Virus record (IMG/VR): IMGVR_UViG_3300034117_001294
Coordinates: 124,001-188,000 of that record
DNA: 64,000 nucleotides
Direction: 5' to 3' (one strand)
The position numbers and the translations under genes were made by a program. Positions 1 to 53,974 of this stretch are shown piece by piece. How positions within the stretch are numbered: the stretch's first letter is position 1; each line of letters starts with the position of its first letter. The notes below the pieces were generated by a model that ran no database searches, was not told the DNA's origin, and saw only the letters and a list, made by a program, of their open reading frames with translations.

Positions 1-201
1 ACCGACCATAGAGATCAGTCACATAATGTTTGGTGGTGGTCGTACTTAACATTTGGCGAAGGTTGGCACTATAACCATCACACTACTCCCGGAAGTTGGA
101 AAATTGGAAAAGAATGGTGGCAGTTTGACCCCGGTCGATACGTTATCCAAATTTTGATATTTCTAGGACTTGCGTCGGAGAAGAAAATAAGTTATAATTA
201 A
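1..201 (+). CDS. C-terminal part of membrane fatty-acid (delta-9-type) desaturase
   Basis: Frame 1 reads ...SHNVWWWSYLTFGEGWHYNHH...WWQFDPG...; matches the third His box (GEGWHNNHH-type) and the W-x-x-DP tail of acyl-lipid desaturases; stop TAA 199-201. Confidence 0.8.
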   Translation, partial: TDHRDQSHNVWWWSYLTFGEGWHYNHHTTPGSWKIGKEWWQFDPGRYVIQILIFLGLASEKKISYN

Positions 202-203
202 TT

Positions 204-304
204 GCGGTCGTGAGCAAATTGGAAAAGCTCCCAAGGTCCACTGAGGGGAACGGGCACGGTCCTAGACGACGCCCTTGTAGGTTCGAAGCCTACCGACCGT
301 ACCA
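204..304 (+). tRNA. tRNA-like RNA, Leu-type body with non-canonical anticodon arm
   Basis: Acceptor stem GCGGTCG/CGACCGT, D-arm AGC-AAATTGGAAAA-GCT, T-arm GTAGG-TTCGAAG-CCTAC, discriminator A plus encoded CCA; the 46-nt central region has no canonical 5-bp/7-nt anticodon arm. Confidence 0.6.
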
Positions 305-317
305 AATTTAGTAAAGT

Positions 318-1013
318 ATGATTAAAACTATAATATCAGGTGTTGATGCTGACAAATACATATACAAAACAAATTTAAAATTTGCAGATGATTTTTGTCA
401 GGATCTGTTAGGTCAAGTTAAACTTAGCATAGACAATCTTGTTTTTAGAAATAACTACAACGACCCTAGAAATAACCCAAGAGATACTTTTAATTTAATA
501 GGAATTGAAGATTCAAGAGAATTGATTCGACGAGGCAGGCAAATCAAGGAATACTTTACAGAAAGTAATGTTATTAACTTTACTCAATATTTTCTTACAG
601 AACATGATACTTCTGAATTCCTTTCACTAACTCCGGACTTTTTAAAAGAACCCACTCCCGGCGAGCCAGTTCCTATATTCCAAATTAGCCACGGAGGAGA
701 AATCCTGCCGCCCCATAAAGGTCATAAAAGAAAAAGTTCTCTGTTTATGCTACTCGAAGGTAACGGAGAAGAGACTAGATGGTATCGAGAAAAAGAGCCA
801 TTCGAGATTATTCACACTACTAGAATACCAGACTTAGATAAAATCGAACATGTGGTCAGTGCCCAAATAGAGCCAGGGTATTGGTATGTGTTCAATCATC
901 TCGAGTGGCATAGTGTACATAAGTTTAGCACTGGTATTCGAATGAACATAGGCCTAGACTTTGACAGTATCTTAGCACCCGAACTAATTAACCTAATAAA
1001 AAAGAATTCTTAA
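318..1013 (+). CDS. putative cupin / 2OG-Fe(II) oxygenase-like protein
   Basis: ILPPHKGH and WYVFNHLEWHSVH motifs spaced like a double-stranded beta-helix metal site. Confidence 0.4.
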   Translation: MIKTIISGVDADKYIYKTNLKFADDFCQDLLGQVKLSIDNLVFRNNYNDPRNNPRDTFNLIGIEDSRELIRRGRQIKEYFTESNVINFTQYFLTEHDTSEFLSLTPDFLKEPTPGEPVPIFQISHGGEILPPHKGHKRKSSLFMLLEGNGEETRWYREKEPFEIIHTTRIPDLDKIEHVVSAQIEPGYWYVFNHLEWHSVHKFSTGIRMNIGLDFDSILAPELINLIKKNS

Positions 1014-1014
1014 A

Positions 1015-1746
1015 ATGTCAGAAGTTAAAAACAACTATATCAAAGCCTCATGGGCACGTAGAGCAGAACTTACAGAATTAGTGTATCAACGAACACAGGG
1101 ATTCGTACATCGAGGTCCATTTCAAGCAATGAAAATTTTGCACAAGTTTAGCTGGGGCGATGGCGACTGTGCTAGCAAATTACTAGGGTTATATGAATGT
1201 GAACTATTTGAAGACATTGAACGAGTTATTAATCAACCGCACGACCTAATCTTAAACATAGGATGTGCTGAAGGTTACTATGGTATTGGTTTGGCAAAAA
1301 GAACACAGACAAAAACCATAGTGTTTGATGTAAACAAAACTGCTGTGGACATTGCAAGAGAAAATGCTGCCGCCAACGGTGTAAACAAAATTCTATTCAG
1401 TACAGACTGCACTATAGACAACTATAGATCATTCCTTGCTTCGGCTAATAATCCGTTTATCTTTATGGATTGCGAAGGTGCAGAAGAAGAAATACTTGAC
1501 CTCAATGTGATGCCAGAACTAACCAAGACCGCAGTAATGGTTGAAAGTCATGACTGTAATAGGCCTGGCCTAACTGATAAGTTAGTTGCACGATTTGCAG
1601 AAACACACAATATTAAACTGATTAGGCAAGGAAATAAAAATCCCTATATGCCGTTAATTGACGATTTAGATGATTATGATAAAATGTTGCTATGTGTGGA
1701 AGCAAGGCCTAGCACAATGATCTGGTTATACATGTATCCTAAATGA
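1015..1746 (+). CDS. class I SAM-dependent methyltransferase (FkbM-like)
   Basis: LNIGCAEGYY glycine motif I, acidic FDVN motif II, FIFMDCEGAE motif. Confidence 0.6.
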   Translation: MSEVKNNYIKASWARRAELTELVYQRTQGFVHRGPFQAMKILHKFSWGDGDCASKLLGLYECELFEDIERVINQPHDLILNIGCAEGYYGIGLAKRTQTKTIVFDVNKTAVDIARENAAANGVNKILFSTDCTIDNYRSFLASANNPFIFMDCEGAEEEILDLNVMPELTKTAVMVESHDCNRPGLTDKLVARFAETHNIKLIRQGNKNPYMPLIDDLDDYDKMLLCVEARPSTMIWLYMYPK

Positions 1747-2381
1747 AGTACGAAATTTTTAAAGAACCATTTGTCCACATTGTGATAGATGATTTTGTAC
1801 CATGGGTGTACAATTTGCAGATTATCAACGAAGCTTGTAGATTAATTCCTGGAATGATTACTAGCAAGGTCAACAGTAATCAAGGCATTGTTATTAGTCC
1901 CGGCTCGAAGAGCAGTAAGAATATGTGGCTGTTCCAGCAATACGCTGCCCGACCAAACAATTTTCAAATTTCAACTTACCTTGAACAGAGAATTTGGTCC
2001 AACGAAGTTAAGCAGATATTACTTGAAGCAAATGATTCTCTCTTTACTAGTATGTTATATACTGATTCTAGTCAGATGCTAATGAGCAAATATACCCACG
2101 AAGATCATTACAGTTGGCATAGAGATTATAATCCCACTGCTACAATGAACTATATGTTTGCTAAAGACCCATCTAAATTTACAGGTGGGGATTTTGTGTT
2201 CGGCGATTGGGAAACTAAACAACCTCTTAAAACTATTCAATTTAAAAATAATAGATTAGTCATCTTTCCTAGCAGAGTCTACCACTGTGTAACTCCTGTA
2301 GTGAAAAAAGATAAAAATCCAGAGTACGATAGATTCACTGTTCAATACTGGAGTAAGCTCAAAGAGATCAGAGAAACTTGA
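1743..2381 (+). CDS. 2OG-Fe(II) oxygenase, prolyl-4-hydroxylase-like
   Basis: WHRD (HxD), FTGGDFVF, NNRLVIFPS..YHCVTPV, terminal R-F-T. Confidence 0.8.
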   Translation: MKYEIFKEPFVHIVIDDFVPWVYNLQIINEACRLIPGMITSKVNSNQGIVISPGSKSSKNMWLFQQYAARPNNFQISTYLEQRIWSNEVKQILLEANDSLFTSMLYTDSSQMLMSKYTHEDHYSWHRDYNPTATMNYMFAKDPSKFTGGDFVFGDWETKQPLKTIQFKNNRLVIFPSRVYHCVTPVVKKDKNPEYDRFTVQYWSKLKEIRET

Positions 2382-2406
2382 CATTCAGATCTAATAACGC
2401 TAATAT
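2378..2406 (+). promoter_or_regulatory. sigma70-type promoter
   Basis: TTGACA-17 bp-TAATAT upstream of tRNA-Thr. Confidence 0.6.
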
Positions 2407-2429
2407 AGTAGCTACTTAAATAAAACATT

Positions 2430-2505
2430 GCTGCCTTAGCTCAGTTGGTAGAGCACCGGTTTTGTAATCCGAAGGTCGTCAGTTCGATTCCGACAGGCAG
2501 CACCA
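2430..2505 (+). tRNA. tRNA-Thr(TGT)
   Basis: 76-nt cloverleaf: GCTGCCT/AGGCAGC acceptor, GCTC/GAGC D-stem, loop TT-TGT-AA, TTCGATT T-loop, encoded CCA. Confidence 0.9.
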
Positions 2506-2517
2506 ACTAATTAAATT

Positions 2518-3675
2518 ATGAGCCAAAAATTCAGATTCCACATATTGGGCTTGCCCCACACAGTATCCAGTAAAGAATATAATGCCTGTGCTTATACTCA
2601 GAAAGTCGTTAAATTCGGCAAGATGATGAAAGAGCGTGGGCATTATGTTATCCACTACGGACATGAAGACAGCGACCTAGTATGCGACGAGCATGTTACG
2701 GTCACTACAAACAAAGACTTAGAAATTGCTTACGGCAGCTATGACTGGCGTAAAAACTTCTTTAAGTTTGATACAGGCGATCATGCATATCAAACATTCT
2801 ATGCAAATGCTATCCGAGAAATTGGACTACGCAAACAACCTAAAGATTTTATCTTACCATTCTGGGGATCTGGTGTTCGTGCAGTATGTGATGCACACAA
2901 CGACCTAATTGTTGTTGAGCCGGGTATTGGCTACGCAGGAGGTCATTGGGCACGTTGGAAGATCTTTGAAAGCTATGCTATTATGCACGCCTTCTTTGGA
3001 TTACAAAGTGTGGGTACATGTAATCAAGATTGGTATCACGGTGTTGTTCCTAACTACTTTGACCTAGAAGACTTTACCTATGAGCCGGAAAAGAAAGAAG
3101 ATTACTTCCTGTTCTTGGGTCGAGTATATGAAGGCAAAGGAGCACACCTTGCCATTGAAGTGACTAGAAAGATTGGTGCAAAATTAATCATGGCTGGTCA
3201 GAATAACCTGGCATCAATGGGTTACGCAGAAACTCCAAGCCACGTAGAATTTGTAGGGTATGCAGATGTTGAAACTCGTAAGAAATTAATGAGCCGTGCC
3301 AAAGGAGCATTTGTTCCTAGTCTATATACCGAACCGTTTGGTGGTGTGCAAGTAGAGATGTTGTTGAGTGGTACTCCTACTATCACAACAGATTGGGGAT
3401 CATTTACAGAGAACAATGTACACGGTGTCACTGGATATCGTTGCAGAACATTTGATCAGTTTGTTTGGGCCGCTGAAAACATTGATAAGATCGATCCGGC
3501 TGCATGTCGTGCGTTTGGTGAGAACTTTAGCCTAGAACGAGTAGCACCGATGTATGAAGAATACTTCCAGATGGTGTATGATGTGCATAGCGGCAAAGGA
3601 TGGTACCAGGATCACCCAGAAAGAGAAAACCTTGATTGGTTGCGTAAGTACTATCCACCAATGGACAAGAAATGA
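2518..3675 (+). CDS. glycosyltransferase, GT4 / GT-B fold
   Basis: [12 protein letters not shown] and [23 protein letters not shown] (E-x7-E signature). Confidence 0.85.
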
Positions 3676-14740: not shown

Positions 14741-15513
14741 AGAATATTATTTTAATAATGTGTCTTGCCTCTGCGGCAGTTGGATGTACTACAGTTCCTG
14801 AGTCATATTATCCAACAAAGGACACTAACTATCACACTAACGGAATTCCTATTGAGGAAAAGTATGTTTTTAAGGAAGTAAAAAATACTCCAAGGCCAAC
14901 TGTTATCATTGCACACGGGTGTGACGGCACTCAAAATCAGTCCTATAAAGAATGGTTAGTACAAGTTAGTCGTTGGGGTTACAATGGAGTTATGGTAGAT
15001 TCTTTTTTGCCAAGAGGTTTTTCTAACCTCTGTCATAGAGGATATGCAGTTAATCCCGAATTACGGGCATACGATATTGGCAAGTTAGTTGATTATATTA
15101 AAAAACAAACTTGGCATACTGGAAAAATAGCAGTAATAGGATTTAGCCACGGAGGCAGTACTGTGTTAAATCTAGCAAATAACGATCGGGTCAGCGGAGT
15201 AGATGCCGCAATAGCATATTATCCGAGCTGTTACAATAAGTATTTCAATTTTATAGGAAGAGATTGGTCAAGACCACAGTTTCCTGTGCAGATACATTTT
15301 GGAGATAAGGACACATGGACGCCGCCAGAATTATGTACAAATATAGAGAAATATGAATCACACATGTATAAAAATGCCACCCATGCGTTTGATATGAATT
15401 TTCCATCAAGAGTTGCATACGGATATTACATGGAGTATAATTCAGAAGCAGACAGGCTCTCAAGAAAACGAACAAAAGAATTTTTAGATAAAAATTTAGT
15501 TGCAAACAAATAA
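14737..15513 (+). CDS. dienelactone-hydrolase-family alpha/beta hydrolase, lipoprotein
   Basis: AHGCDG, GFSHGG nucleophile elbow, GDKD, ATHAFD; lipobox AVGC. Confidence 0.75.
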
Positions 15514-15528
15514 ACAATCTGCTACAAT
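15500..15528 (+). promoter_or_regulatory. sigma70-type promoter
   Basis: TTGCAA-17 bp-TACAAT. Confidence 0.55.
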
Positions 15529-15544
15529 AAACAAAGGAAAAATT

Positions 15545-16165
15545 ATGCTAGTACCAATGGTAATCGAAAAAACAAGTTCGGGAGAACGTGCATTTGACAT
15601 TTTTAGTCGACTGCTGAACGAACGAATTGTTTTCTTAAATGGTCCAGTTGATGACCATAGTGCCAATTTGATTGTGGCACAGATGCTGCATCTTGAAAGT
15701 CAAGATGCAGCCAAAGACATTCATTTTTACATTAACAGTCCTGGCGGAGTAGTCACCGCTGGACTTAGCATCTACGATGTTATGCAGTTTATCAAACCAG
15801 ATGTCTGCACTTATGTTATGGGACAAGCCTGCTCTATGGGCTCTTTCCTTGCACAAGCAGGTGCCAGGGGTAAACGATTTGTACTTCCAGAGGCTCGAAC
15901 AATGATCCATCGTGTTAGTTCAGGAACACGGGGCACAAGCGGATCAGTTCATGTACAAGATCTGCAATTTGAAGATGCTAAACGTAGTTTTGAAGAATCT
16001 AAACGAGTAAACGAACGGCTGACTCAGCTGTATGTCAAACACAATACTGCTGGGAAAACATACGAAGAAATGTTCGAAACTATGAAGTTTGACACATTTT
16101 TAAGTGCCGCAGAGGCTGTACAGCACGGTCTTGCTGATCAAGTAGTGGAAAATAGACCCGTATAA
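15545..16165 (+). CDS. clpP: ATP-dependent Clp protease proteolytic subunit
   Basis: [38 protein letters not shown] (Ser), MIH (His), D-T-FLSA-EA; ATG at 15545 after AAAGGA. Confidence 0.95.
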
Positions 16166-20790: not shown

Positions 20791-23700
20791 ATGCCACTAA
20801 ATCAACAGATTATCAATATCGGTAGCGAACCAAACGATGGAACAGGCGACAGCGTCTATGCAGCTTTTCAGAAAGTTAACTCTAACTTTACAGACATCTA
20901 TACATTGTTAGGTTTTGGTGCTGGATTCAGCTTTTTAAGACTAAAGGAAGCTCCTAGCACATTAAGACCCAATGCTATTTTACAAGTTAACGCAGAAGGT
21001 AATAAATTTCTTAATAAAATTTTAGTAGCTGGCACAGGTATTAACATTGACTTTGTTACAAGTTCAACTGAAATCAGGATCGTTAATACTGCATCTAGCC
21101 TATCAAGTGATAAGAATCCAACACTAGCAGCAGACATCAGCGGTGAGAATGCATTTAGTATCATTAACATGGATAACACAGGTCCACATGCAGATTGGGA
21201 TGCAGTTAGTCGTAAGTGGGTTTATGAGAACTTTGTTAACCGTGACGGTATTACTAGATATGATAACACTAGTGTAAGTGAGAGCATATATGACGGAATG
21301 AGTACGATTCGGGATAATGTTGAATTATTAGTAAGTCCTACAAGTTCTACTCACATTGTTAACAAAGGATATGTTGACGAACTTGTTGACAACAGTGGTT
21401 TTGCAAGTCGCCAAAACTTCTTTGTTAGTTTAAGTGGTGACGATCATCAGTATTCTTTACCTAGCTATAAACGTGGGCGGGCCTTTGCCTATGCATTTAA
21501 AACTGTTAATCGTGCCGCAGAAGCAGCAGAACAATTTATTGCAGCAAGTCAAATTGTACTAGGACCGTACCAAAAAACTGTTTCGATGAGTAACGGCACA
21601 GCAAATCCTGTTGTTACTAACATAACCACTAGTACATTGCTAGACACTAGCTCTTTTGGTATCCGCTTAAGATTAACACTAGATCCAGCTAGTTTTAATA
21701 TTGGATCAGATCCCTTTATTAATAAAAGTATTTTCCCAGGAAACTACATCATTGGTGCAAGCAGTGAAGCAGTAGGTCTAGTTGAAGCTATTACACTCGA
21801 TGACGTGAATGGCTATGAATACTATGATATTACTCCAGTTGATTACGCTAAACCATATCGTATGGCAGTTGAACCAGAGCCGTTCAGCTATAATGCGTAT
21901 GTAACCAGTGGTGGTGAAATTACCGAAGTAGCGTTCTTATTAGACGTAGCAGACAGCATTGACATTCCAGATTTTTGGATTGGTTACAAATTTGTCATCA
22001 CTAATTCTAGTTACGGTGTCATAAGCTATGGATATATTTCTCGAATTATTCAAGAACTAGACGACGATCAAAACGTTAGAGACACTATTGTTGTTGAGTT
22101 TAGAGATGGTCTCGGATTACAAAATGGCGATGTTGTTGACTATGATAAGTGGCACGTCTATGCTGCCGACTTTGAATTAAACGAAGAGCTACAATGGGGC
22201 CAAAAACAGAACAAGAATCAATCTACTATTATGGTAGAGTCGGGTGAGCATAACGATCAATACCCAATTAAGGTTCCGGAAAACTGTTCTATCCGTGGTG
22301 ATGAATTCCGCCGAAGTGTTATTAAACCTGCACCTTTAGAAGGTACAAGACTTCCAGGTATTAGTAGTTCTAAATGGGCTAATACATACTTCTTTAGAGA
22401 TGCCCAAATTGACGGTATTATTGTAACACAATTAAACACTGCAACTGATTATGCAAGTGCAGCAGGTATTACTATCAGCTCAACTGATAATGACTCAGTT
22501 ACACAAACTGTTACTGTTACTGTAGATGCAGGAGTTGTTAGCACCAATTGGATTGGAAAGATTTTCAAAACTACCGGTGCAGTTTCTGCACAAGGTGAAG
22601 TTCGAGCCGTAAGTAGCAATACTTTTGCAGTTTCTCTAGCACAGAACGAAGTTAATTTTGAAAAGAGTGCTTACAATTATACAGTAGGCAATACTATTGC
22701 TTACGGTGCATGGCATATATATGAACCGTTCAAATACGGATATCATTACCTAAGAGATGCTAGTCGTCCAGTTAACACATTAACTACTCAGACTAACAGT
22801 GGTGGTTATAATAATGCCGGTTCTATTCTACTAGACAACCGAGAATTTATCAAAGCAGAATGTATTGGCTTCCTAAATGCTACATACCCTAGTTTTGTAT
22901 TTGATGAAGATAAATGTGCAAGAGACATCGGTATTATTGTTGATTCAATTGCATACGATTTAACTAACGGTGGAAATAATAGAACTATTAATGCAGGCGA
23001 TAGCTATCGAAATGTTGCAGTAGTTAAAGGATCCCAACTAGCAGAGACTGTTGCGGCTATTAACTATATTAACACTATTGGTCAACGAATTATTAAGAAT
23101 CAACAACCTGTTACTTCTTATCAAGCGGTCGAAGATCAAGTGTTCACTGACCCAGTTGGTGGTACACTAGTTAGTAGTGGGTCTGATTTAATCTTAGCAG
23201 ACTTAGTGCAGGCCTGCTCACGCATTGTCAACAACGATCCTGATTTTAATCCTCCCAAGTATAACGATCAAATGGATGTGTTCTTGATGAACGATGCAAC
23301 AATTAATCGATATATTAGTTGTCAAGGACACGGCGGCTTCATGAAAGTACTTGACCCAGACGGTCAAATTCTTGCCAAGTCCCCATATACTCAAACTGCT
23401 TCTAGCTTCTCTAAGAGCAAGAACAGGCACGTATTTGCAGGTGGTATGTTTATTGACGGATTCTCCGGCAATACTAAGATGACTCCTGCTAGCATTACTA
23501 CTGCATCAGGAACAGGCTATCCAGTAAGAATTAATTCAGCATTGACTACTGGCAGCATTGGACGTCCGAGTGTTGTGCCTGGTGAAGGATATATTCGTCC
23601 CCAAGTGCCTTGCTTCTTTGTTCATAGCGGTGTTACATACGAAGTCAGCTTTGTTAGTAACTTTAATCCAACAAACGGTACAGGTAGTTTAAACTTAAAT

Positions 23701-26700
23701 CCGTTACGTCCAGGTGGTATTGCCACTATTACTAATGCAGGAAACATTGCTACAGGATTTAAAGCTAACGCAGGAACAGTACCTGTAAGATTCAGTGCTC
23801 CGACACAGGCAGGTGGTCTAAATGCAACAGGTACTGCGGTGATTGGAGTTTCGGGTAATGTATCTAGTGTTTCTGTATCCTTCCCAGGATCAGGGTATAC
23901 AAACGGATTATTCACGTTCGGAACTACTCAAGGTTGCCCAAATATTGTTATTGGTGGTGCTCGAATTAGTTGGACTAGAAATAGTTCAGGTGCAATTACT
24001 GGTTACGAAATTATCGACGGTGGTGTTGGATACGCAGTTGGCACAGTTATTAATTTCCCAAGTTCCGGTGGTACAAGTGCTGCCGCAACAGTGGCCAGTG
24101 TAGACGGCAATGGTACAATTACTGCAATTACTATTGGAACAGCAGGCAGCGGCTATAATTCAGATCCGGCAGTAACATTTGGTACTGGGTTAGCATATGT
24201 GGCCACAGTTAAACCTGGATTCATTGTTACCGCAGCACATCCTTTACCAAGCGAGATCACATTAATCACAGCTGGTAATAGAAGTATGTTGGCTAACGAC
24301 TTCACACAGATCAACGACTTAGGCTACGGTATTTTTGCAACTAACGGCGGTTTAGTAGAAAACGTTTCCATGTTTACTTACTACTGCTATAGTGCGTACT
24401 ATTCTTTAAATGGTGCTCAATGTCGTAGTATTGCTGGTTCTACTTCCTACGGTCTAAATGGTCTTAAGTCAGAGGGGAGCGATCCAACAGAGGTTCCAAT
24501 TGCAGTTAGAAACAAACGTTCTACTAGCCAGATTGCCACAATTACCGCAGCAGGCACATACACAAACAAAGCTGAAGATGCAACCTTGTATGTAACTGGG
24601 TTGTCTTATGCACCTATTGCACAAAGTCAACTTGAAGTTAACCATAGTGGAACTGTTGTCCTTTATAATGTCAAGAGTGCAGTACAAGATACATTTGATA
24701 GTACCGTGTATTCTCTATCATTAGATGACGGGCAAGGACAGGGACTAAGGGCAGCTATTGCAAACGGTGAGAAAGCCACGTTACGCATATACTACAATCA
24801 AGAATTATTAGATGTAAATGCAGCAACATTAAGCCGTCCTAGTACTGTATTGACTTTAGACGAAGATCCAACATACGTATATCGTGTATTAAAATATTCA
24901 GACCTTGGCGGAGATACTGCACTTGCAGAAAGTGATACTCCTTACAACTATATTAACCTAACTCCGTGGACTGAGAGTAACGGTTTATACAGACAAGGCT
25001 TAGGCAAATTAACAATTACCAGCGGCGGTGCTGGATTTGGTTCGACTACCACAAACTATACTGCAACAATTCCTGCACCAAGTACCGCAGGAACTGCATC
25101 AGTTAATGGCACTGCAACAGATACTGATTTAATTACTATCAGTGGTGCAAGCGGCACTATAATGATAGGTAGTCGTGTAACTTTAACATCTGGTGGTGCT
25201 GATCCTAACGGTGCTGCAACTTATGTAACTTGGGTTAATTCTAGTTCTACACAGATTAGAGTTGACCGAACATGGACATGGCCTAACAGTACTGGCCTAA
25301 CATTCTCCGGAACACAGGCAGTTGGTTACGGCAAGGCTAACAGCAGTGGACAAATTTTTAAAGTTATTTTAACTAATCAGGGTGCAGGCTACGCCGGAAC
25401 CAGTGTTAGTAATATCACGATTACTGGAGGATCTGCCACAGCTACTGTAACAGCTTACCCAGATGGCGAAACTGGTAATAACAGGATCAAAGTTGTAGAC
25501 CTTGACGCAGATGATCAGGCAAGGATAGGTGCGGGATTAACTGCAAGTACTCCTTACTATTATATATTTGGTCATGCAGGTAATTTGTATAAAATTACAG
25601 ATTATATTAACAGCGACGAAACTTATAATGAATGGGGAGAAATTGTTGTTGAGAGAGTTAGTGATGGTGCTACATTACAACATCAAGTTTTGGCTACAGC
25701 ATTAAAAGCAGGTATTACATCTAATCAACCGGGTGATATTACTGTACGTATTTCTACAATGCGTGTTACCGGACACGACATGTTGAACGTAGGTACAGGA
25801 GGCTATGCTGACAGTAAGTATCCAAACGATTTATACGGCCCTCCAAGCAATCCTCCAGACTCGGCATTAGAAACTCAAGAGGTAGGAAAAGGTCGTGTAT
25901 ACTATGCCACTACTGACCAAGACGGTAACTTTAAAGTTGGTAAGTTCTTCAGCGTAGACCAAGGTCGCGGTACTGTGAGTATCAGTGCTCCGATTAGTTT
26001 AACTAACGTTGATGGCATTAGCTTTAAACGTGGGCAGACTCTTGTACAGGTGTTTAGCGTAGACGGTACGTTAGGCGGCAACAGTAATAACAGCGTTCCA
26101 ACTGAACGTGCTATACAAACATATGTTAATAGTAGATTAGGCCTAAACAGAAACAATACTACCGCAGGTGTCAGTCCAATCGGTAATGGATTCTTAGATC
26201 GTGGCGGCGTTTTAGAAATGCTCGATACTATCAAGATGGGCGACAACCGTATTGTTAATATGGCCGATCCAGCAGCTGATAAAGATGCTGTTAACAGACA
26301 ATGGGCTAACCTAAACTATATCAATACCAGTGGCGACACTATGGTAGGTACGTTAGTTACTCAAAAGTTAGAACCTAGTGCTAACTTAACATACGACATT
26401 GGTGAAAATGGCAAGCGATACGTTAATGTCTATGCGAACAGATTCCAAGGTACTGCAACTACTGCACAGAGCTTAGATGCTGCGGTAACTATTCAACTTA
26501 GCGGTGATGTTACTGGTAGTGCTAGTTTCTCTGGTGCAGGTGGTATCAACATTGTGACTACTATATCAAACAATAGTGTTGCATTAGGTACTGATACAAC
26601 TGGAGATTATGTATCTACTGGTGCAACTAGCGGATATGGTCTAAGCGGTAGCACAACAGGAGAAACTCAAACATTCACCGTTACTTCAAACGGTACAAGT

Positions 26701-27276
26701 TCTAATAGTGCAAGTACACTGGTCTTTAGAGACGGTAGTGGCAATTTTAGTGCAGGGACCGTTACTGCAACATTTAGCGGTAACATAACCGGTACTCCGA
26801 CTGTTCCGAGCATCACAAAGAGCGGCACTAACGGAACTGGCGACATTGGTCAAAGTGATAACTTGTTTGGAACAGTTTATGGCACTGCTTACTATGCAAA
26901 ATACGGTGACTTGGCAGAAAAATATTTGCCAGATGCACATTATGAGCCAGGTACTGTTGTAGTATTTGGCGGTGCAAAAGAAGTTACTGCTGCGGTAGAA
27001 TTCATGGACCGCAGGATCGCCGGCGTGGTTGCAACTAATCCGGCGTTCAAAATGAATGCCGAACTAGAAGGTGGCGTCTTTATTGCACTTACTGGTCGTG
27101 TTCCATGTAAAGTTGTAGGTAAAGTACGCAAAGGCGATATGTTAATTTCTAGTGGTGCTCCGGGTGTTGCAACTGCTGAAAAGAATCCTGCAATGGGTTC
27201 AGTAATTGGCAAAGCATTAGAAGATTATGATAGTCAAACAATTGGCGTCATTGAAGTTGTAGTAGGGAGAATTTAA
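20791..27276 (+). CDS. giant tail-fibre/baseplate protein with C-terminal intramolecular chaperone
   Basis: N-terminal INIGSEPNDGTGD (T4 gp9/gp10-like), beta-helix-like IRGDEFRRS segment, KCARDIG..VD repeat, GSGY repeats, C-terminal YGDLAEKY...GRVPCKV. Confidence 0.75.
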   Translation: MPLNQQIINIGSEPNDGTGDSVYAAFQKVNSNFTDIYTLLGFGAGFSFLRLKEAPSTLRPNAILQVNAEGNKFLNKILVAGTGINIDFVTSSTEIRIVNTASSLSSDKNPTLAADISGENAFSIINMDNTGPHADWDAVSRKWVYENFVNRDGITRYDNTSVSESIYDGMSTIRDNVELLVSPTSSTHIVNKGYVDELVDNSGFASRQNFFVSLSGDDHQYSLPSYKRGRAFAYAFKTVNRAAEAAEQFIAASQIVLGPYQKTVSMSNGTANPVVTNITTSTLLDTSSFGIRLRLTLDPASFNIGSDPFINKSIFPGNYIIGASSEAVGLVEAITLDDVNGYEYYDITPVDYAKPYRMAVEPEPFSYNAYVTSGGEITEVAFLLDVADSIDIPDFWIGYKFVITNSSYGVISYGYISRIIQELDDDQNVRDTIVVEFRDGLGLQNGDVVDYDKWHVYAADFELNEELQWGQKQNKNQSTIMVESGEHNDQYPIKVPENCSIRGDEFRRSVIKPAPLEGTRLPGISSSKWANTYFFRDAQIDGIIVTQLNTATDYASAAGITISSTDNDSVTQTVTVTVDAGVVSTNWIGKIFKTTGAVSAQGEVRAVSSNTFAVSLAQNEVNFEKSAYNYTVGNTIAYGAWHIYEPFKYGYHYLRDASRPVNTLTTQTNSGGYNNAGSILLDNREFIKAECIGFLNATYPSFVFDEDKCARDIGIIVDSIAYDLTNGGNNRTINAGDSYRNVAVVKGSQLAETVAAINYINTIGQRIIKNQQPVTSYQAVEDQVFTDPVGGTLVSSGSDLILADLVQACSRIVNNDPDFNPPKYNDQMDVFLMNDATINRYISCQGHGGFMKVLDPDGQILAKSPYTQTASSFSKSKNRHVFAGGMFIDGFSGNTKMTPASITTASGTGYPVRINSALTTGSIGRPSVVPGEGYIRPQVPCFFVHSGVTYEVSFVSNFNPTNGTGSLNLNPLRPGGIATITNAGNIATGFKANAGTVPVRFSAPTQAGGLNATGTAVIGVSGNVSSVSVSFPGSGYTNGLFTFGTTQGCPNIVIGGARISWTRNSSGAITGYEIIDGGVGYAVGTVINFPSSGGTSAAATVASVDGNGTITAITIGTAGSGYNSDPAVTFGTGLAYVATVKPGFIVTAAHPLPSEITLITAGNRSMLANDFTQINDLGYGIFATNGGLVENVSMFTYYCYSAYYSLNGAQCRSIAGSTSYGLNGLKSEGSDPTEVPIAVRNKRSTSQIATITAAGTYTNKAEDATLYVTGLSYAPIAQSQLEVNHSGTVVLYNVKSAVQDTFDSTVYSLSLDDGQGQGLRAAIANGEKATLRIYYNQELLDVNAATLSRPSTVLTLDEDPTYVYRVLKYSDLGGDTALAESDTPYNYINLTPWTESNGLYRQGLGKLTITSGGAGFGSTTTNYTATIPAPSTAGTASVNGTATDTDLITISGASGTIMIGSRVTLTSGGADPNGAATYVTWVNSSSTQIRVDRTWTWPNSTGLTFSGTQAVGYGKANSSGQIFKVILTNQGAGYAGTSVSNITITGGSATATVTAYPDGETGNNRIKVVDLDADDQARIGAGLTASTPYYYIFGHAGNLYKITDYINSDETYNEWGEIVVERVSDGATLQHQVLATALKAGITSNQPGDITVRISTMRVTGHDMLNVGTGGYADSKYPNDLYGPPSNPPDSALETQEVGKGRVYYATTDQDGNFKVGKFFSVDQGRGTVSISAPISLTNVDGISFKRGQTLVQVFSVDGTLGGNSNNSVPTERAIQTYVNSRLGLNRNNTTAGVSPIGNGFLDRGGVLEMLDTIKMGDNRIVNMADPAADKDAVNRQWANLNYINTSGDTMVGTLVTQKLEPSANLTYDIGENGKRYVNVYANRFQGTATTAQSLDAAVTIQLSGDVTGSASFSGAGGINIVTTISNNSVALGTDTTGDYVSTGATSGYGLSGSTTGETQTFTVTSNGTSSNSASTLVFRDGSGNFSAGTVTATFSGNITGTPTVPSITKSGTNGTGDIGQSDNLFGTVYGTAYYAKYGDLAEKYLPDAHYEPGTVVVFGGAKEVTAAVEFMDRRIAGVVATNPAFKMNAELEGGVFIALTGRVPCKVVGKVRKGDMLISSGAPGVATAEKNPAMGSVIGKALEDYDSQTIGVIEVVVGRI

Positions 27277-51203: not shown

Positions 51204-51704
51204 ATGTTGACAATTATAAAAAATCCAGACCCAATATTGGCTGAAAGAATGCCAGAATTTGATTTTGAAAATCCACTAACCGATCCTGTTCAACTTGAAA
51301 AAGACATGATTGAAGCTATGCTTGCCAATGGCGGCATTGGATTATCTGCTAATCAAATAGGTGTTAGAACTCGTATGTTTGTTATGGGACATCAGAAATA
51401 TCGAGATCATGCACAGGCATTTTTCAATCCAATCATTGCGAGAGTAACAGACGACTTGCTCGAAGAAGAGGAAGGATGCTTGAGTTTTCCCAACATTTAT
51501 GCTAAAATAAAAAGACCAAGAGGAATTCTTGTTAGGTTTCAAAACTCAAAAGGTGAGACCCAAGAAGCTGAATTTTTTGGTTACGAGTGTCGATGCTTTT
51601 TACATGAATTTGATCATCTAGAAGGAATCACATTTCAAAATAGAACAAGTGCTCTCAAGTGGGCGTTGGCAGTAAAGAAATCAATCAAAAGGAAATACAA
51701 ATAA
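51204..51704 (+). CDS. def: peptide deformylase
   Basis: GIGLSANQIG, EEGCLS, HEFDHLEGI. Confidence 0.95.
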   Translation: MLTIIKNPDPILAERMPEFDFENPLTDPVQLEKDMIEAMLANGGIGLSANQIGVRTRMFVMGHQKYRDHAQAFFNPIIARVTDDLLEEEEGCLSFPNIYAKIKRPRGILVRFQNSKGETQEAEFFGYECRCFLHEFDHLEGITFQNRTSALKWALAVKKSIKRKYK

Positions 51705-53974
51705 TGCTGGAACCAAATAACGATCTCGAAGGAATGTTTGAACGTGCGATCGAAGTTGCCGCTAAACATAAACATGAGTATATCACGCTGGAACATTTTT
51801 TGTACAGTATGATAACTGATGAAAACTTCAAAGGGATGCTAAAAGATTTTGGTGCCGAAGTTGAGTTGTTAAAGAAGAGTCTCGAAAAGTTTATTCGAGA
51901 TGATCTTAACGATATTAAAACTGACAAAGAAAATTATCGTCCAAAGAAAACAAACACTGTAGAGCGTATGTTGAATCGTGCTTTTACACAAGTGTTGTTT
52001 AGCGGCCGTACAGTAATTGAACCAATTGACTGCTTTATTAGTATTTTTAGTGAAAAGAAGAGCTTTGCTAACTTCTTTCTACGCAAGGCTAAAATTGATA
52101 AAGACAAGTTTATTGAATTTCTACATAACAGTGCGTTAAACGAAGACGGTGAGGCTAGCGAAGTAGGTAGCAATCAACTAGAAAAAATGATTGTTCAATA
52201 CTGTGCAAACTTAACTAATAGGGTCAAGCAGAAAAAGATTGATCCTGTTATCGGTCGTGAGAAAGAAATTGAAGAAATTCAACTTGCACTAGCACGCCGT
52301 CAAAAATCAAATGTTATGTTGATCGGCGACCCAGGTGTAGGTAAAACTGCTATTGCAGAGGGCCTTGCTCGCAAGATTGAAGAAGGCAAGGTTCCTAAGT
52401 TTATTCAAGGTCATACTGTTTACAGTCTAGATATCAGTGCATTACTAGCAGGCAGTAAGTATCGTGGCGACTTTGAAGAACGCTTAAAGATGGTTATTAC
52501 TGCACTTGAAAAGAAAAAGAACTGTATCTTGTTCATCGACGAAGCACATATGATGAACGGTGCTGGATCAGCAAGTGGCGGATCTAATGACATGGCAAAT
52601 ATGTTGAAACCAGCATTAGGTAAAGGTACTATCAAAGTTGTGGCATCGACTACATGGGAAGAATTCCGTAAGCACTTTGAAAAGGATCGTGCCCTGATGC
52701 GTCGATTCCAACGTGTTGTAGTTAACGAGCCAGATGAAGCTACTGCTATTAAAATCCTTAAAGGTCTTAAGAAGTACTATGAACAGCATCACGGTGTTAA
52801 GATCACTAATCAGGCAGTTATTGACAGCGTAAAATATTCTATCAAGTATATGACTGATAAGAAGCTGCCAGATAAAGCAATTGACCTAATTGACTGTGCA
52901 TGTGCTAGATTCAAAGTCAGAGACGAAGAAGCAGGCATTGTTGATCACGATGAAATTTTATTTGAAGTGTCAAAGTTAACTGGCTTACCTTTAGATCAAA
53001 TTGCACAAAAAGAAAACAAGAATCTTAAAGACCTTGACAAGAACATGCGTAACAAAGTGTTTGGTCAGGAAACTGCAATTGAAATATTGTTAGATAAAAT
53101 CTTTATTGCACAAGCAGGTTTAAAGAGCTTAAACAAACCAGTAGGTAGTTTCCTATTTACAGGACCAACCGGTGTAGGTAAGACTGAAACTGCAAAAGTA
53201 TTGGCTGCAAGTATGGGAGTAGAACTAGTTCGCTTTGATATGAGTGAATTCCAAGAGAAACACTCAATTGCTAAGTTTATTGGTGCTCCCCCCGGCTATA
53301 TTGGATTTGAAGACAATGCAGGTATGTTGATTACCAAACTGCAAGAGCATCCAACTGCTATTTTACTGTTTGATGAAATTGAGAAAGCTCATCCTGATGT
53401 TGCTAACTTACTACTACAAATGATGGACAATGGTTATGTTACTGGATCTAATGGTAAGAAGGCTGATGGTCGAAATGCCATTCTTATCCTTACTAGTAAT
53501 TTAGGTGCTGCCGATAACGATCGTAATGCAGTTGGATTTAGTAGTTTAGAAAGAGGTGACGAAACTGATGGTGCAATTAACAGTTTCTTTAAACCAGAAT
53601 TCCGCAATCGATTAGACGGTATTATCAAGTTTGGTAAACTAGATCACAATACCATGGCTAAGATTGTCAAGAAGTTTATTGACGAACTAAACAGTTTGTT
53701 GAAAGATAAGAATGTTGCTGTTAAGTTAACTGCTGACGCTGCCGAATTGTTAATCAAGAAAGGATTTAATCGTAAGATGGGTGCTCGTCCACTACAACGT
53801 ACAATTGATGATATGATTAAGAAGCCGCTGAGTAAGGAAATTTTATTTGGTCGGTTAGTAAACGGTGGAGTTGTTGAAGTAGGTGCTAACAGTAATGATC
53901 TTACCTTAACTTATCCTGAAATTTTACCCGTAGTAGAAAATGTTGAAATTGATAAAGCGACAGAAAGTCGATAA
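51704..53974 (+). CDS. clpA: ClpA-type AAA+ unfoldase
   Basis: N-domain HEYITLEH, two Walker A motifs (GDPGVGKT, GPTGVGKT), FIDEAH, RFDMSE, VGF ClpP-docking loop, GARPL; ATG at 51704. Confidence 0.9.
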   Translation: MLEPNNDLEGMFERAIEVAAKHKHEYITLEHFLYSMITDENFKGMLKDFGAEVELLKKSLEKFIRDDLNDIKTDKENYRPKKTNTVERMLNRAFTQVLFSGRTVIEPIDCFISIFSEKKSFANFFLRKAKIDKDKFIEFLHNSALNEDGEASEVGSNQLEKMIVQYCANLTNRVKQKKIDPVIGREKEIEEIQLALARRQKSNVMLIGDPGVGKTAIAEGLARKIEEGKVPKFIQGHTVYSLDISALLAGSKYRGDFEERLKMVITALEKKKNCILFIDEAHMMNGAGSASGGSNDMANMLKPALGKGTIKVVASTTWEEFRKHFEKDRALMRRFQRVVVNEPDEATAIKILKGLKKYYEQHHGVKITNQAVIDSVKYSIKYMTDKKLPDKAIDLIDCACARFKVRDEEAGIVDHDEILFEVSKLTGLPLDQIAQKENKNLKDLDKNMRNKVFGQETAIEILLDKIFIAQAGLKSLNKPVGSFLFTGPTGVGKTETAKVLAASMGVELVRFDMSEFQEKHSIAKFIGAPPGYIGFEDNAGMLITKLQEHPTAILLFDEIEKAHPDVANLLLQMMDNGYVTGSNGKKADGRNAILILTSNLGAADNDRNAVGFSSLERGDETDGAINSFFKPEFRNRLDGIIKFGKLDHNTMAKIVKKFIDELNSLLKDKNVAVKLTADAAELLIKKGFNRKMGARPLQRTIDDMIKKPLSKEILFGRLVNGGVVEVGANSNDLTLTYPEILPVVENVEIDKATESR

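What the first reader, a model, noticed from the sequence alone, without database searches (positions are those of the whole stretch)
204..304. tRNA-Leu-like RNA with intact acceptor, D and T arms but no normal anticodon arm
Seen: 101 nt with a 7-bp acceptor, encoded CCA, a Leu-style D arm, A15 with U48, discriminator A73 and a canonical T arm. The 46 nt between the D and T arms fold only into an imperfect CCCAAG-GTCCA-CTGAGGG hairpin (5-nt loop) and a long GGGC...GCCC arm. Known: LeuRS ignores the anticodon and reads A73, the A15-U48 core and the long variable arm. Inference: it could be aminoacylated yet unable to decode. It might then act as a decoy for anticodon nucleases or as a non-ribosomal Leu donor (speculatively for L/F-transferase N-degron tagging, given phage ClpA and ClpP in this window). 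A decaying tRNA gene is the alternative.
Basis: partly seen in the sequence, partly recalled or inferred. Interest (0 to 1): 0.7.

Follow-up and report, generated by a model that had tools for sequence, protein, structure and literature searches.

The report
Phage tRNA-Leu look-alike without an anticodon
Window 204-304 is one member of a conserved family of about 75 distinct phage RNAs that keep every part of a leucine tRNA needed for folding and charging but replace the anticodon arm with an arbitrary hairpin, so it is a working non-decoding tRNA mimic, not a dying gene.

Summary
Window 204-304 has a 7-bp acceptor stem, a Leu-type D arm, a canonical T arm, A73 and CCA, but no anticodon arm. 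ARAGORN and Rfam's tRNA model do not call it.

It is not decaying. The same architecture occurs in about 75 distinct sequences from uncultured lake phages, most of them fragments of genomes of about 350 kb. Acceptor, H1-base and H2 helices covary, and 97% of cells pair. A covariance model separates the family (77-128 bits) from ordinary tRNAs (45 bits or less). There is one copy per genome and none in 185,000 prokaryote genomes or in GenBank phages.

- **H1 (anticodon-arm position):** any hairpin of 12-28 nt.
- **H2 (long arm):** held at 21-26 nt with an NUA triloop.
- **Invariant:** U8, A14, A15, G18G19, A20a, U48 and A73, which match the published E. coli LeuRS identity set.
- **Promoter:** a sigma-70-type promoter places +1 at the first nucleotide.

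Best reading: an early-expressed, probably leucylatable, non-decoding tRNA-Leu mimic that acts off the ribosome. I favour a decoy for host factors that bind class-II tRNA bodies. A non-ribosomal Leu donor is the main rival. Neither expression nor charging could be tested.

The parts
170..175 (+). -35-like hexamer TTGCGT (3 of 6 matches), 17-nt spacer to the -10 box; lies in the 3' end of the upstream desaturase gene
   Evidence: Sequence. Across the family the same position holds TTGACA-like hexamers.
193..198 (+). -10 box TATAAT, ending 5 nt before the first nucleotide of the RNA
   Evidence: Sequence. In 69 distinct family upstream regions the -10 box ends 5-7 nt before +1 in 68. TATAAT is perfect in 42. 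Total mismatches are 3 or fewer in 58 of 69, against 71 of 2290 random positions.
204..304 (+). The whole tRNA-Leu-like RNA (101 nt), probably a leaderless primary transcript starting at G204
   Evidence: Covariance model R1 gives 89.7 bits, and it is the only family-level hit in the 228,849-bp record. ARAGORN and Rfam tRNA are negative.
204..210 (+). Acceptor stem, 5' strand (pairs with 294-300)
   Evidence: 100% paired in 63 sequences; 6 of 7 pairs show compensatory changes.
211..229 (+). U8, G9 and the D arm (3-bp stem 213-215/227-229; 11-nt loop with A14, A15, G18G19, A20a)
   Evidence: U8, A14, A15, G18, G19, A20a and A22 are invariant. The third stem pair switches from C-G to G-C in perfect correlation, 17 versus 46 sequences. 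The same D loop is used by true tRNA-Leu of related phages.
230..247 (+). H1: hairpin in the anticodon-arm position (CCC/GGG base, irregular top, no 7-nt loop)
   Evidence: All four base pairs covary (C-G to G-C, U-A and G.U). The rest is 12-28 nt, with 56 variants among 63 sequences.
248..251 (+). Linker GAAC between H1 and H2 (G248 invariant)
   Evidence: Column composition.
252..274 (+). H2: long arm in the variable-arm position (4-bp outer helix, 3x3 internal loop, GUC/GAC inner helix, CUA triloop)
   Evidence: Length is 21-26 nt in all 63 members. The outer helix is 99.6% paired, with G-C to A-U changes. The inner helix covaries (U-A to A-U in 21 sequences). The triloop is always NUA.
275..276 (+). 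U47-U48 (U48 is the partner of A15)
   Evidence: Invariant, including in the 15 loci found through the D arm alone.
277..293 (+). T arm: GUAGG / UUCGAAG / CCUAC
   Evidence: The stem sequence is invariant in every member, including those retrieved without using the T arm.
294..304 (+). Acceptor 3' strand (294-300), discriminator A73 (301), encoded CCA (302-304)
   Evidence: A73 is present in 63/63 and 15/15. CCA is encoded in 58-60 of 63 and in 9 of 15.
318..1013 (+). Next gene (231 aa, no Pfam hit; some homologues hit a 2OG-Fe(II) oxygenase family). It starts 13 nt after CCA with no terminator between, so it is probably co-transcribed.
   Evidence: Synteny desaturase | RNA | this gene holds in L032-L042.

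Best explanation
Window 204-304 encodes a functional, non-decoding RNA derived from a class-II tRNA-Leu. It belongs to a family confined to uncultured freshwater phages, most of them jumbo.

**Shown here**
- The cloverleaf core is under purifying selection with compensatory changes.
- The arm in the anticodon position can be any hairpin of 12-28 nt, so no codon can be read.
- The long arm H2 keeps a fixed size and an NUA triloop.
- A sigma-70-type promoter sits so that transcription starts at nucleotide 1.
- There is one copy per genome.

**Inferred**
- Host RNA polymerase makes it early as a leaderless transcript. Its 3' end is trimmed to CCA like a tRNA.
- It retains exactly the published bacterial LeuRS identity set (A73, A15-U48, G18G19, A20a, U8-A14, D/T-loop pairs). 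LeuRS does not need the anticodon arm, so host LeuRS probably binds it and probably leucylates it.
- It then acts off the ribosome.

**Preferred role**
I favour a translation-neutral stand-in for class-II tRNA bodies. Such a decoy or sponge would occupy host factors that bind or attack the acceptor, elbow or variable-arm part of tRNAs without disturbing decoding.

**Rough odds**
- Functional conserved RNA: 0.9
- Non-decoding: 0.85
- Leucylated: 0.5
- Decoy role: 0.3
For: **Conservation and covariation**
- The RNA sits in a conserved syntenic position in relatives whose neighbouring protein is only 60-85% identical. Acceptor pairs covary there.
- There are 63 distinct sequences from a T-arm pattern and 12 more from a D-arm pattern.
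- 94-97% of cells pair, and 18-19 of 30 pairs show double changes. No shuffle out of 500 reaches this, and slid controls fall to 20-47% paired.

**Distinctness**
- Covariance-model scores are 77-128 bits for the family and 45 bits or less for ordinary tRNAs. The best non-family hits in isolated phages are true tRNA-Leu.

**Arms and identity positions**
- H1 spans 12-28 nt in 56 variants. H2 spans 21-26 nt and always ends in an NUA triloop.
- The LeuRS determinant positions are invariant, set against PMC9976931 and PMC2377443.
- The D loops are identical or near-identical to those of the lineage's own tRNA-Leu.

**Promoter**

**Precedent for the decoy idea**
- Septu and retron-Eco7 cut the variable arm of the class-II tRNA-Tyr. 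Over-expressed phage tRNA-Tyr partly protects the host tRNA (PMC13096335).
Against: - No expression, processing or charging data could be obtained. No RNA run was listed.
- The complex-prediction tool would not fold LeuRS with the RNA.
- The host, and therefore its LeuRS, is unknown.
- H2 is longer than natural tRNA-Leu variable arms. In Aquifex an oversized arm lowered leucylation (PMC2377443).
- About 13% of members do not encode CCA.
- Most records look like one phage lineage, so part of the conservation reflects shared ancestry.
- No defence system or partner protein is linked to the RNA. Its gene neighbourhoods differ between clades.
- The single-sequence folding energy is unremarkable.
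Confidence: 0.4

Rival explanations
1. It is a dedicated non-ribosomal leucine donor. Host LeuRS charges the RNA, and because it cannot enter decoding it feeds a tRNA-dependent transferase. One candidate is the host L/F-transferase, which would create N-degrons that phage ClpS and ClpA-like/ClpP then degrade.
For: - The LeuRS identity set is fully conserved.
- The phage encodes ClpS, a 771-aa double-AAA+ ClpA-like protein (window 51659-53974) and ClpP.
- The T stem carries A51-U63, the weakest EF-Tu pair at that position. The summed change is +0.7 kcal/mol against yeast tRNA-Phe (PMC3239215), the direction expected for a non-ribosomal donor.
- The T-stem sequence is invariant while the acceptor stem covaries freely.
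Against: - No L/F-transferase (PF03588) was found in the window's record, in a 98%-complete relative or in six others.
- No class Ia synthetase was found in those eight relatives.
- The ClpP-like gene's closest homologues in isolated phages are annotated in some records as ClpP and in others as head-maturation protease.
- The predicted EF-Tu affinity (about -9.4 kcal/mol) is within the normal tRNA range.
- ClpS co-occurrence is uninformative because most records belong to one lineage.
- No phage use of aminoacyl-tRNA outside translation is known to me.
Confidence: 0.13
2. It is a cis-acting 5' module. The tRNA-like fold sits at the 5' end of an operon transcript. There it either protects the mRNA's 5' end or serves as a tRNA-type processing site that releases a nearly leaderless downstream mRNA, as in 'tRNA punctuation'.
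For: - The promoter directly abuts the RNA in nearly all members.
- No terminator follows it.
- In the window's clade the next ORF starts only 6-15 nt after CCA, in L033 without room for a Shine-Dalgarno sequence.
Against: - In several phages the RNA lies inside tRNA arrays and is followed by tRNA-Ser, not by an ORF.
- The distance to the next ORF varies from 6 to more than 60 nt, and the downstream genes differ between clades.
- A structural cap or processing signal would not require A73, A15-U48, A20a or a fixed H2 triloop.
Confidence: 0.12
3. It is an unconventional decoder or an interrupted tRNA gene. On this reading one of the two central hairpins carries a real anticodon. Candidates are H2's CCUAGAC read as UAG or CUA, and the majority clade's C(U/C)CAUAG loop. 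Alternatively a short insert is removed to give a normal tRNA.
For: - In L002 the H2 top can be drawn as a 4-bp stem with the 7-nt loop CCUAGAC.
- Most family members carry a 5-bp covarying stem with a conserved Met-like 7-nt loop in H1.
- ARAGORN at 80% stringency proposes a tRNA-Arg with a 17-nt intron.
Against: - The H2 inner helix covaries right up to a 3-nt loop (U-A to A-U, C-G to A-U/G-C), so it is a triloop hairpin.
- H1 length varies by 16 nt, and in eight members it is a 4-5-bp stem with a 4-5-nt loop.
- The Met-like loop sits on a stem about 4 bp too long and often has C33.
- The window's clade has no 7-nt loop at all.
- The relaxed ARAGORN models are not conserved in relatives.
- Bacterial and phage tRNA introns are self-splicing and more than 200 nt long (established knowledge).
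Confidence: 0.04
4. It is a decaying tRNA-Leu pseudogene with no function.
For: It lacks an anticodon arm. Standard detectors miss it. Its single-sequence folding energy is ordinary.
Against: - About 75 distinct conserved versions exist with compensatory changes in four helices.
- Tertiary-interaction nucleotides are invariant.
- It has a dedicated consensus-like promoter.
- Position is conserved across relatives whose neighbouring protein has diverged to 60% identity.
Confidence: 0.02

Closest known systems
Bacterial/phage class-II tRNA-Leu
   Same: 7-bp acceptor stem, A73, CCA, 3-bp D stem, an 11-nt D loop of the form R-A-A-U-U-G-G-N-A-R-A, the A15-U48 pair, a long extra arm and a canonical T arm. 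True tRNA-Leu are the best non-family hits of the family model in isolated phages. The lineage's own tRNA-Leu share the D loops.
   Different: There is no 5-bp anticodon stem with a 7-nt loop. The arm in that position is a free-form hairpin of 12-28 nt. The extra arm is longer (21-26 nt) and has an internal loop and an NUA triloop. ARAGORN and Rfam do not detect it.
Engineered minimal tRNA-Leu lacking the anticodon arm (Larkin et al. 2002, cited in PMC9976931; Aquifex anticodon-arm deletion, PMC2377443)
   Same: Those molecules show that LeuRS charges a tRNA-Leu body without its anticodon arm, provided that A73 and the D/T-loop tertiary contacts are intact. These are the elements conserved here.
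   Different: Those are laboratory constructs. This is a natural, conserved gene with its own promoter, and its charging has not been tested.
Phage tRNAs that counter tRNA-cleaving defences (T5/T6 tRNA-Tyr against retron-Eco7 and Septu, PMC13096335; T5 tRNA-Lys against PARIS, from my own knowledge)
   Same: A phage-encoded tRNA-shaped RNA expressed during infection. The targeted site in tRNA-Tyr is the tip of a class-II variable arm, a 3-bp GUC/GAC stem with a triloop in E. coli tyrU. H2's tip has the same form.
   Different: Those are working decoders that replace or out-compete the cleaved host tRNA. This RNA cannot decode, and no link to any defence system has been shown.
Non-proteinogenic tRNAs (for example Staphylococcus tRNA-Gly for cell-wall bridges) and Bacillus cereus tRNA-Other (my own knowledge)
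   Same: tRNA-derived molecules that are charged but kept out of, or used outside, ribosomal elongation.
   Different: Those keep a normal anticodon arm and are cellular. A partner transferase or regulatory target is known for them, and none is known here.
tmRNA tRNA-like domain and viral 3' tRNA-like structures
   Same: Aminoacylatable tRNA mimicry without codon reading.
   Different: - tmRNA has Ala identity (G3.U70), an mRNA part and pseudoknots. ARAGORN's tmRNA search is negative here, and position 3-70 is G-C.
- Plant-virus TLSs are 3'-terminal parts of RNA genomes with pseudoknotted acceptors.

Membership tests
Canonical decoding tRNA (Rfam RF00005; ARAGORN model) | 7-bp acceptor stem, discriminator and (encoded or added) CCA | tested here: met
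   204-210/294-300, A301 and CCA 302-304. 100% paired across the family.
Canonical decoding tRNA (Rfam RF00005; ARAGORN model) | D arm with G18G19 and T arm with UUCRA loop | tested here: met
Canonical decoding tRNA (Rfam RF00005; ARAGORN model) | 5-bp anticodon stem with a 7-nt loop (U33, anticodon 34-36) at a fixed distance from the elbow | tested here: not met
   H1 is a 3-bp base with an irregular top in the window. It is 12-28 nt across the family, including 4-bp stems with tetraloops.
Canonical decoding tRNA (Rfam RF00005; ARAGORN model) | Detected by the curated tRNA covariance model or by ARAGORN at default thresholds | tested here: not met
   No hit at gathering threshold or at E<=10. 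ARAGORN finds nothing at default settings or with introns allowed at default stringency.
Substrate set of bacterial LeuRS (E. coli/Aquifex identity rules, PMC9976931, PMC2377443) | Discriminator A73 | tested here: met
   A in 63/63 and 15/15 members.
Substrate set of bacterial LeuRS (E. coli/Aquifex identity rules, PMC9976931, PMC2377443) | A15-U48 pair, G18G19 at the Leu position in the D loop, A20a, U8-A14 | tested here: met
   All invariant. U48 is also invariant in members found without using the T-arm pattern.
Substrate set of bacterial LeuRS (E. coli/Aquifex identity rules, PMC9976931, PMC2377443) | T-loop partners U54-A58, U55, C56 | tested here: met
   U54, U55 and C56 are kept in all members. 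A58 is kept in all 63 members found with the T-arm pattern and in all but one (L173, loop UUCGACU) of the 15 found through the D arm.
Substrate set of bacterial LeuRS (E. coli/Aquifex identity rules, PMC9976931, PMC2377443) | Actual leucylation by LeuRS | not testable with these tools
A biochemical assay is needed.
tmRNA | Ala identity pair G3.U70, a tag reading frame and pseudoknots | tested here: not met
   ARAGORN's tmRNA search is negative. Position 3-70 is G-C or A-U. The RNA is only 101 nt.
Described bacterial tRNA mimics and other curated RNA families (Rfam 15: YrlA/Y RNA, skipping-rope and others) | Match to the family covariance model | tested here: not met
   No Rfam family matches 100-420 apart from two chance-level snoRNA hits.
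tRNA pseudogene | Substitutions spread without regard to pairing, no conserved expression signals, and erratic presence among relatives | tested here: not met
Non-ribosomal aminoacyl-tRNA donor systems | A tRNA-dependent transferase encoded with, or co-occurring with, the RNA | tested here: not met
   No PF03588 in 9 records, including one that is 98% complete. Only that transferase family was searched; FemAB-type enzymes and cyclodipeptide synthases were not.

The most novel reading that the evidence does not exclude
Freshwater phages, most of them jumbo, carry a purpose-built 'blank' tRNA. It is made at once from a strong host-type promoter without needing RNase P. LeuRS and the rest of the tRNA machinery accept it, but the ribosome cannot see it. 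It would work either as a decoy that absorbs host immune enzymes aimed at tRNA bodies or 3' ends, or as a private leucine donor for protein tagging linked to the phage's own ClpS/ClpA/ClpP. Either way it would be the first natural anticodon-less aminoacyl-tRNA mimic described in a DNA virus.
Probability: 0.3. Interest if true: 0.85.

Novelty: new variant of a known kind. Interest (0 to 1): 0.66.

Why it matters
Phage tRNA genes are usually explained by codon usage or, more recently, by replacement of host tRNAs destroyed by defence nucleases. A conserved phage tRNA that has deliberately lost its anticodon fits neither explanation. It points to a use of the tRNA body itself, in charging, binding or decoying. 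It is also a natural counterpart of the minimalist tRNA-Leu constructs used to define LeuRS recognition. The hypothesis is cheap to test with a 101-nt transcript, LeuRS and defence-system co-expression. The family is invisible to standard tRNA and Rfam annotation, so similar blank tRNAs may be overlooked elsewhere.

Tried and rejected
1. **H2 as the real anticodon arm.** I considered a 7-nt loop CCUAGAC carrying UAG, with H1 as a 25-nt insertion at position 26. L002's four perfect pairs suggested this. I rejected it because more distant members covary right up to a 3-nt loop.

2. **A nested 72-nt tRNA starting at 233.** ARAGORN proposes this at 70% stringency. Three GGUC copies could each pair with the 3' acceptor strand. 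I rejected it because the second copy decays in L002 and L035.

3. **A tRNA-Arg with a 17-nt intron.** ARAGORN proposes this at 80% stringency. It is not conserved.

4. **tmRNA and Rfam searches.** Both were negative.

5. **Searches for known relatives.**
   - blastn against GenBank phages found only T-arm matches or nothing.
   - The family model run on S-CAM7, ACG-2014f, PA5oct, Atu_ph07 and Phosso found only ordinary tRNAs.

6. **RNA sequencing runs.** None was listed. Only lake-water DNA metagenomes hold the sequence.

7. **Complex prediction with E. coli LeuRS.** The job was not folded by the tool. It is no evidence either way.

8. **ClpS co-occurrence.** It is uninformative because most records look like one phage lineage.

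9. **EF-Tu T-stem calculation.** It gave only a mild weakening (+0.7 kcal/mol), within the normal range.

10. **Gene-neighbourhood clustering.** It found no partner gene shared by all clades.

11. **Literature searches.** They found no description of this family. It may be an unnamed entry among the 8,495 IMG/VR candidate RNAs of PMC10690425, which I could not check.
Full report
**1. The observation**

- The acceptor stem is 204-210 paired with 294-300: G1.U72 plus six Watson-Crick pairs.
- U8 and G9 follow, then a 3-bp D stem (213-215/227-229) around an 11-nt loop, AAAUUGGAAAA.
- The T arm is GUAGG/UUCGAAG/CCUAC (277-293), preceded by UU (275-276).
- A73 is 301 and CCA is 302-304.

The 46 nt in between fold into two hairpins.
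- H1 (230-247) has a CCC/GGG base and an irregular top.
- H2 (252-274) has a GGGC/GCCC outer helix, a 3x3 internal loop, a GUC/GAC inner helix and a CUA triloop.

ARAGORN finds only tRNA-Thr(UGU) at 2430-2505 in the window. Even with introns allowed it does not at default stringency. Rfam gives no tRNA hit at gathering threshold or at E<=10. The folding energy is not better than that of shuffles (z = -0.8). The single sequence therefore proves nothing by itself.

**2. Where it comes from**

The window is bases 124001-188000 of a 228,849-bp IMG/VR virus record, which CheckV rates 65% complete.
- The record carries 39 ARAGORN tRNAs, nearly all in a cluster at 86.5-102.4 kb. They include four tRNA-Leu.
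- A sequence identical over window 150-1020 occurs in 20 lake-water metagenomes from 2020-2025.
- Its ClpP is closest to those of jumbo phages of Proteobacteria: PA5oct, Atu_ph07 and Phosso.
- No psbA was found in nine related records. A cyanobacterial host is therefore not indicated, although a glycosyltransferase gene is 72-76% identical in DNA to that of Synechococcus phages.

**3. Homologues by synteny**

The protein encoded just downstream (318-1013) has a graded series of homologues. I fetched contigs for homologues at 85, 78, 74, 70, 68 and 60% identity. All show the same order: fatty-acid desaturase, a gap of 115-155 nt, then this gene. Every gap holds the same RNA.
- In L035 the acceptor has A1-U72 and U6-A67 where the window has G1.U72 and C6-G67.
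- In L037 and L041 it has U2-A71 in place of C2-G71.
- The H2 outer helix changes G-C to A-U, and the inner helix changes GUC/GAC to GAAC/GUUC.
- H1 changes completely: 18 nt in the window and 27-28 nt in L033 and L037.

This is the pattern of a selected structure, not of decay.

**4. A large family**

A pattern built on the T arm found 101 stretches in IMG/VR. After removing three ordinary tRNAs and one truncated copy, 63 distinct sequences remain. A second pattern built on the D arm, independent of the T arm, found 15 further loci with 12 new sequences.

Pairing and covariation were counted on the MAFFT alignment and then on the model-fitted alignment.
- On the MAFFT alignment 94.2% of cells pair, and 18 of 30 pairs show changes on both sides.
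- No shuffle out of 500 reaches these values. Sliding the partners drops pairing to 25-47%.
- On the model-fitted alignment pairing is 97.3%. That alignment leans towards the structure.

By helix:

| Helix | Pairs with compensatory change |
|---|---|
| Acceptor | 6 of 7 |
| H1 base | 4 of 4 |
| H1 distal | 4-5 of 5 |
| H2 outer | 2 of 4 |
| H2 inner | 2 of 3 |

The third D-stem pair switches from C-G to G-C in perfect correlation, 17 versus 46 sequences.

A covariance model built from the family scores members at 77-128 bits and every ordinary tRNA at 45 bits or less.
- In the three isolated phages whose best hits I checked, those hits are true tRNA-Leu (Phosso, Atu_ph07) and tRNA-Ser (PA5oct).
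- There is one copy in the window's genome.
- The T-arm pattern found no member in one genome each of 185,579 prokaryote species.
- No member was found in GenBank phages.
- By CheckV, most records are 8-55% fragments of genomes of about 350-380 kb, and one is 353 kb at 98% complete. A few fragments with 2-3% estimates may belong elsewhere.

**5. What varies and what does not**

H1 is always a hairpin. It ranges from 12 nt (a 4-bp stem with tetraloop UUAG, UAAA, AUAG or UUCG) to 28 nt, with 56 variants among 63 sequences.
- In the commonest clade H1 is a covarying 5-bp stem with a conserved 7-nt loop C(U/C)CAUAG.
- That stem-loop sits on a CCC/GGG extension, about 4 bp too far from the elbow to act as an anticodon. 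It often has C at position 33.
- The window's clade has no 7-nt loop at all.

H2 stays within 21-26 nt with the same outer-helix, internal-loop, inner-helix layout. It always ends in a triloop NUA.

The following positions are invariant and were not part of the first search pattern: U8, A14, A15, G18, G19, A20a, A22, G7-C66's partner, A10-U25, G11-C24 and A73.

U47U48 and the T-stem sequence GUAGG/CCUAC were in that pattern. They are nevertheless also invariant in all 15 loci found through the D arm and in the members found by synteny.

CCA is encoded in about 87% of members. The rest end in CCG, CAA, CAU, AAU, UUA, UUC or UAG.

**6. Leu identity**

According to the review PMC9976931, E. coli leucine identity rests on these features:
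- A73;
- the A15-U48 pair;
- G18G19 and A20a;
- the D/T-loop tertiary pairs.

The anticodon and the long arm are not needed, and variants lacking both arms remain chargeable (Larkin et al. 2002). In Aquifex, deleting the whole anticodon arm costs only 2.5-fold in affinity. The orientation and maximal size of the variable arm do matter there, and editing needs the anticodon arm (PMC2377443).

Every one of these determinants is invariant in the family.
- The two D-loop types of the family (AAAUUGGCAAA and GAAUUGGCAGA) match or nearly match the D loops of the lineage's own tRNA-Leu(CAA) and tRNA-Leu(UAA).
- Other IMG/VR phages use the window's exact D arm in bona fide tRNA-Leu(UAG) and tRNA-Leu(UAA).
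- Ser identity is unlikely (A73, no G2-C71). Ala is excluded (3-70 is G-C or A-U). Tyr and most other identities need the anticodon, by established identity rules.

If the RNA is charged at all, leucine is the expected amino acid. Charging itself was not testable here. The complex-prediction tool would not fold a protein-RNA pair.

**7. Expression signals**

In 69 distinct upstream regions a -10 box ends 5-7 nt before nucleotide 1 in 68.
- TATAAT is perfect in 42.
- The -10 and -35 boxes together have 3 or fewer mismatches in 58 of 69, against 3% of random positions.
- All members start with a purine.

In the window the -10 box is TATAAT (193-198), and a weak -35 box, TTGCGT (170-175), lies 17 nt upstream. 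Even the copies inside tRNA arrays have their own promoter. The RNA is therefore most likely a leaderless primary transcript made by host polymerase early in infection.

No terminator follows. In the window's clade the next ORF starts 6-15 nt after CCA. In the commonest clade a conserved ORF starts 40-70 nt downstream. In array copies a tRNA-Ser follows within 3-8 nt.

**8. Context**

Neighbourhoods differ between clades.
- Window clade: desaturases, then the RNA, then a 231-aa protein, a methyltransferase, a 2OG-Fe(II) oxygenase and glycosyltransferases.
- Commonest clade: a divergent radical-SAM gene, then the RNA, then a 161-aa protein and ThyX.
- Third group: tRNA arrays.

No gene travels with the RNA in all clades.
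- The window's record and eight relatives, including the 98%-complete genome, lack an L/F-transferase. The eight relatives also lack a class Ia synthetase and a CCA-adding enzyme.
- The phage does encode ClpS, a 771-aa ClpA-like ATPase (window 51659-53974), a ClpX-like ATPase and ClpP.
- ClpS appears in 5 of the 6 largest related records. Because most records look like one lineage, this is not independent support for an N-degron link.

**9. Interpretation**

The data establish a conserved, single-copy, promoter-equipped, tRNA-Leu-derived RNA that cannot decode. They fit a molecule selected to be recognised as a tRNA body, by the maturation enzymes and very plausibly by LeuRS, while staying out of translation.

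What it does next is inference. I favour a decoy or sponge role, for these reasons:
- the promoter is strong and early;
- no RNase P step is needed;
- the anticodon arm is irrelevant;
- a distinctive long arm is held constant;
- defence systems such as Septu and retron-Eco7 cut the variable arm of a class-II tRNA, and over-expressed phage tRNA-Tyr partly shields the host tRNA (PMC13096335).

E. coli tyrU's variable arm is a GUC/GAC stem with a triloop, the same form as the tip of H2. That resemblance is only a 3-bp stem, and H2's stem covaries within the family.

The main rival is a non-ribosomal Leu donor.
- The T stem is invariant in sequence while the acceptor covaries.
- It carries A51-U63, the weakest EF-Tu pair at that position.
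- The summed effect is only +0.7 kcal/mol, which gives about -9.4 kcal/mol, within the normal range (PMC3239215).

A purely cis-acting role is less likely, given the array copies and the conserved A73, CCA and D-loop determinants.

**10. Novelty**

No Rfam family, GenBank phage annotation or paper found in seven completed literature searches describes this family. It may sit unnamed among the thousands of IMG/VR candidate RNAs of PMC10690425. I rate it a new variant of a known kind: a tRNA-derived, non-decoding RNA.

**11. Limits**
- There are no expression or charging data.
- The host is unknown.
- The family was collected by sequence patterns, so more divergent members are probably missing.
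- Conservation is measured within what is largely one phage lineage.

Noticed in passing
Outside the window: own record G000 91452-91528 and 91667-91743: Two 77-nt tRNAs with Leu anticodons (UAG, CAA), A73 and G1.U72 but only a short variable loop and a 6-bp anticodon stem. They look like type-I tRNA-Leu, which is rare in bacteria (a Streptomyces case is described in PMC6614811). They sit beside two normal 84-nt tRNA-Leu.
   Followed up: partly
Outside the window: G000 91361-91446 and 93479-93570: ARAGORN reports a class-II-like tRNA with a 6-nt anticodon loop (anticodon given as 'ga'). It also reports a 92-nt tRNA-Ile(UAU) with a variable arm of about 21 nt. Both are structurally odd members of the 39-tRNA set.
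   Followed up: no
window 2378-2505: A solitary tRNA-Thr(UGU) at 2430-2505 (Rfam 65.9 bits) is a second copy of the Thr(UGU) in the main cluster. A promoter-like TTGACA-N17-TAATAT site lies at 2378-2406.
   Followed up: partly
window 15500-16165 and 51659-53974; G000 61350-61580 and about 38.6 kb: The phage carries a full Clp-type set:
- ClpP (210 bits);
- a 771-aa double-AAA+ ClpA/ClpB-like protein;
- a 415-aa ClpX-like protein;
- ClpS (95 bits), the N-degron adaptor.

The closest ClpP homologues in isolated jumbo phages are annotated in some records as head-maturation protease.
   Followed up: partly
L045-L143 (commonest clade), arm H1: Most family members carry a covarying 5-bp stem capped by a conserved 7-nt loop C(U/C)CAUAG. 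This resembles a Met/Ile2 anticodon loop, but it is mounted on an extra CCC/GGG helix. The conserved loop suggests a clade-specific contact that the window's clade lacks.
   Followed up: partly
all family members, T stem (window 277-281/289-293): The T-stem sequence GUAGG/CCUAC never varies in about 75 distinct sequences, whereas 6 of 7 acceptor pairs covary. This suggests sequence-specific reading of the T stem by an unknown partner.
   Followed up: partly
L057, L059, L060, L064 and others, 5-60 nt after the RNA: A conserved motif, roughly TATAAGTATTAGAACATAAC, is followed by AAGGAA and a conserved ORF start (ATGTCAACAACAGTAGAACAAC...). In some members a GC-rich hairpin is inserted between CCA and the motif. 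It may be a second promoter or a leader element.
   Followed up: no
L144 (Gammaproteobacteria MAG) and L145 (Methyloprofundus MAG): Long tRNA arrays in MAG contigs share the family's exact T arm. One 86-nt tRNA has a GUU anticodon, a long variable arm and G73. These contigs may be phage-derived.
   Followed up: no
window 20791-27276: A very long ORF (2161 aa) on the + strand was not examined.
   Followed up: no
window 2518-3675: A glycosyltransferase gene is 72-76% identical at the DNA level to genes of marine Synechococcus phages S-CAM7 and ACG-2014f. The rest of the phage looks related to jumbo phages of Proteobacteria and has no psbA. This may reflect gene exchange.
   Followed up: partly
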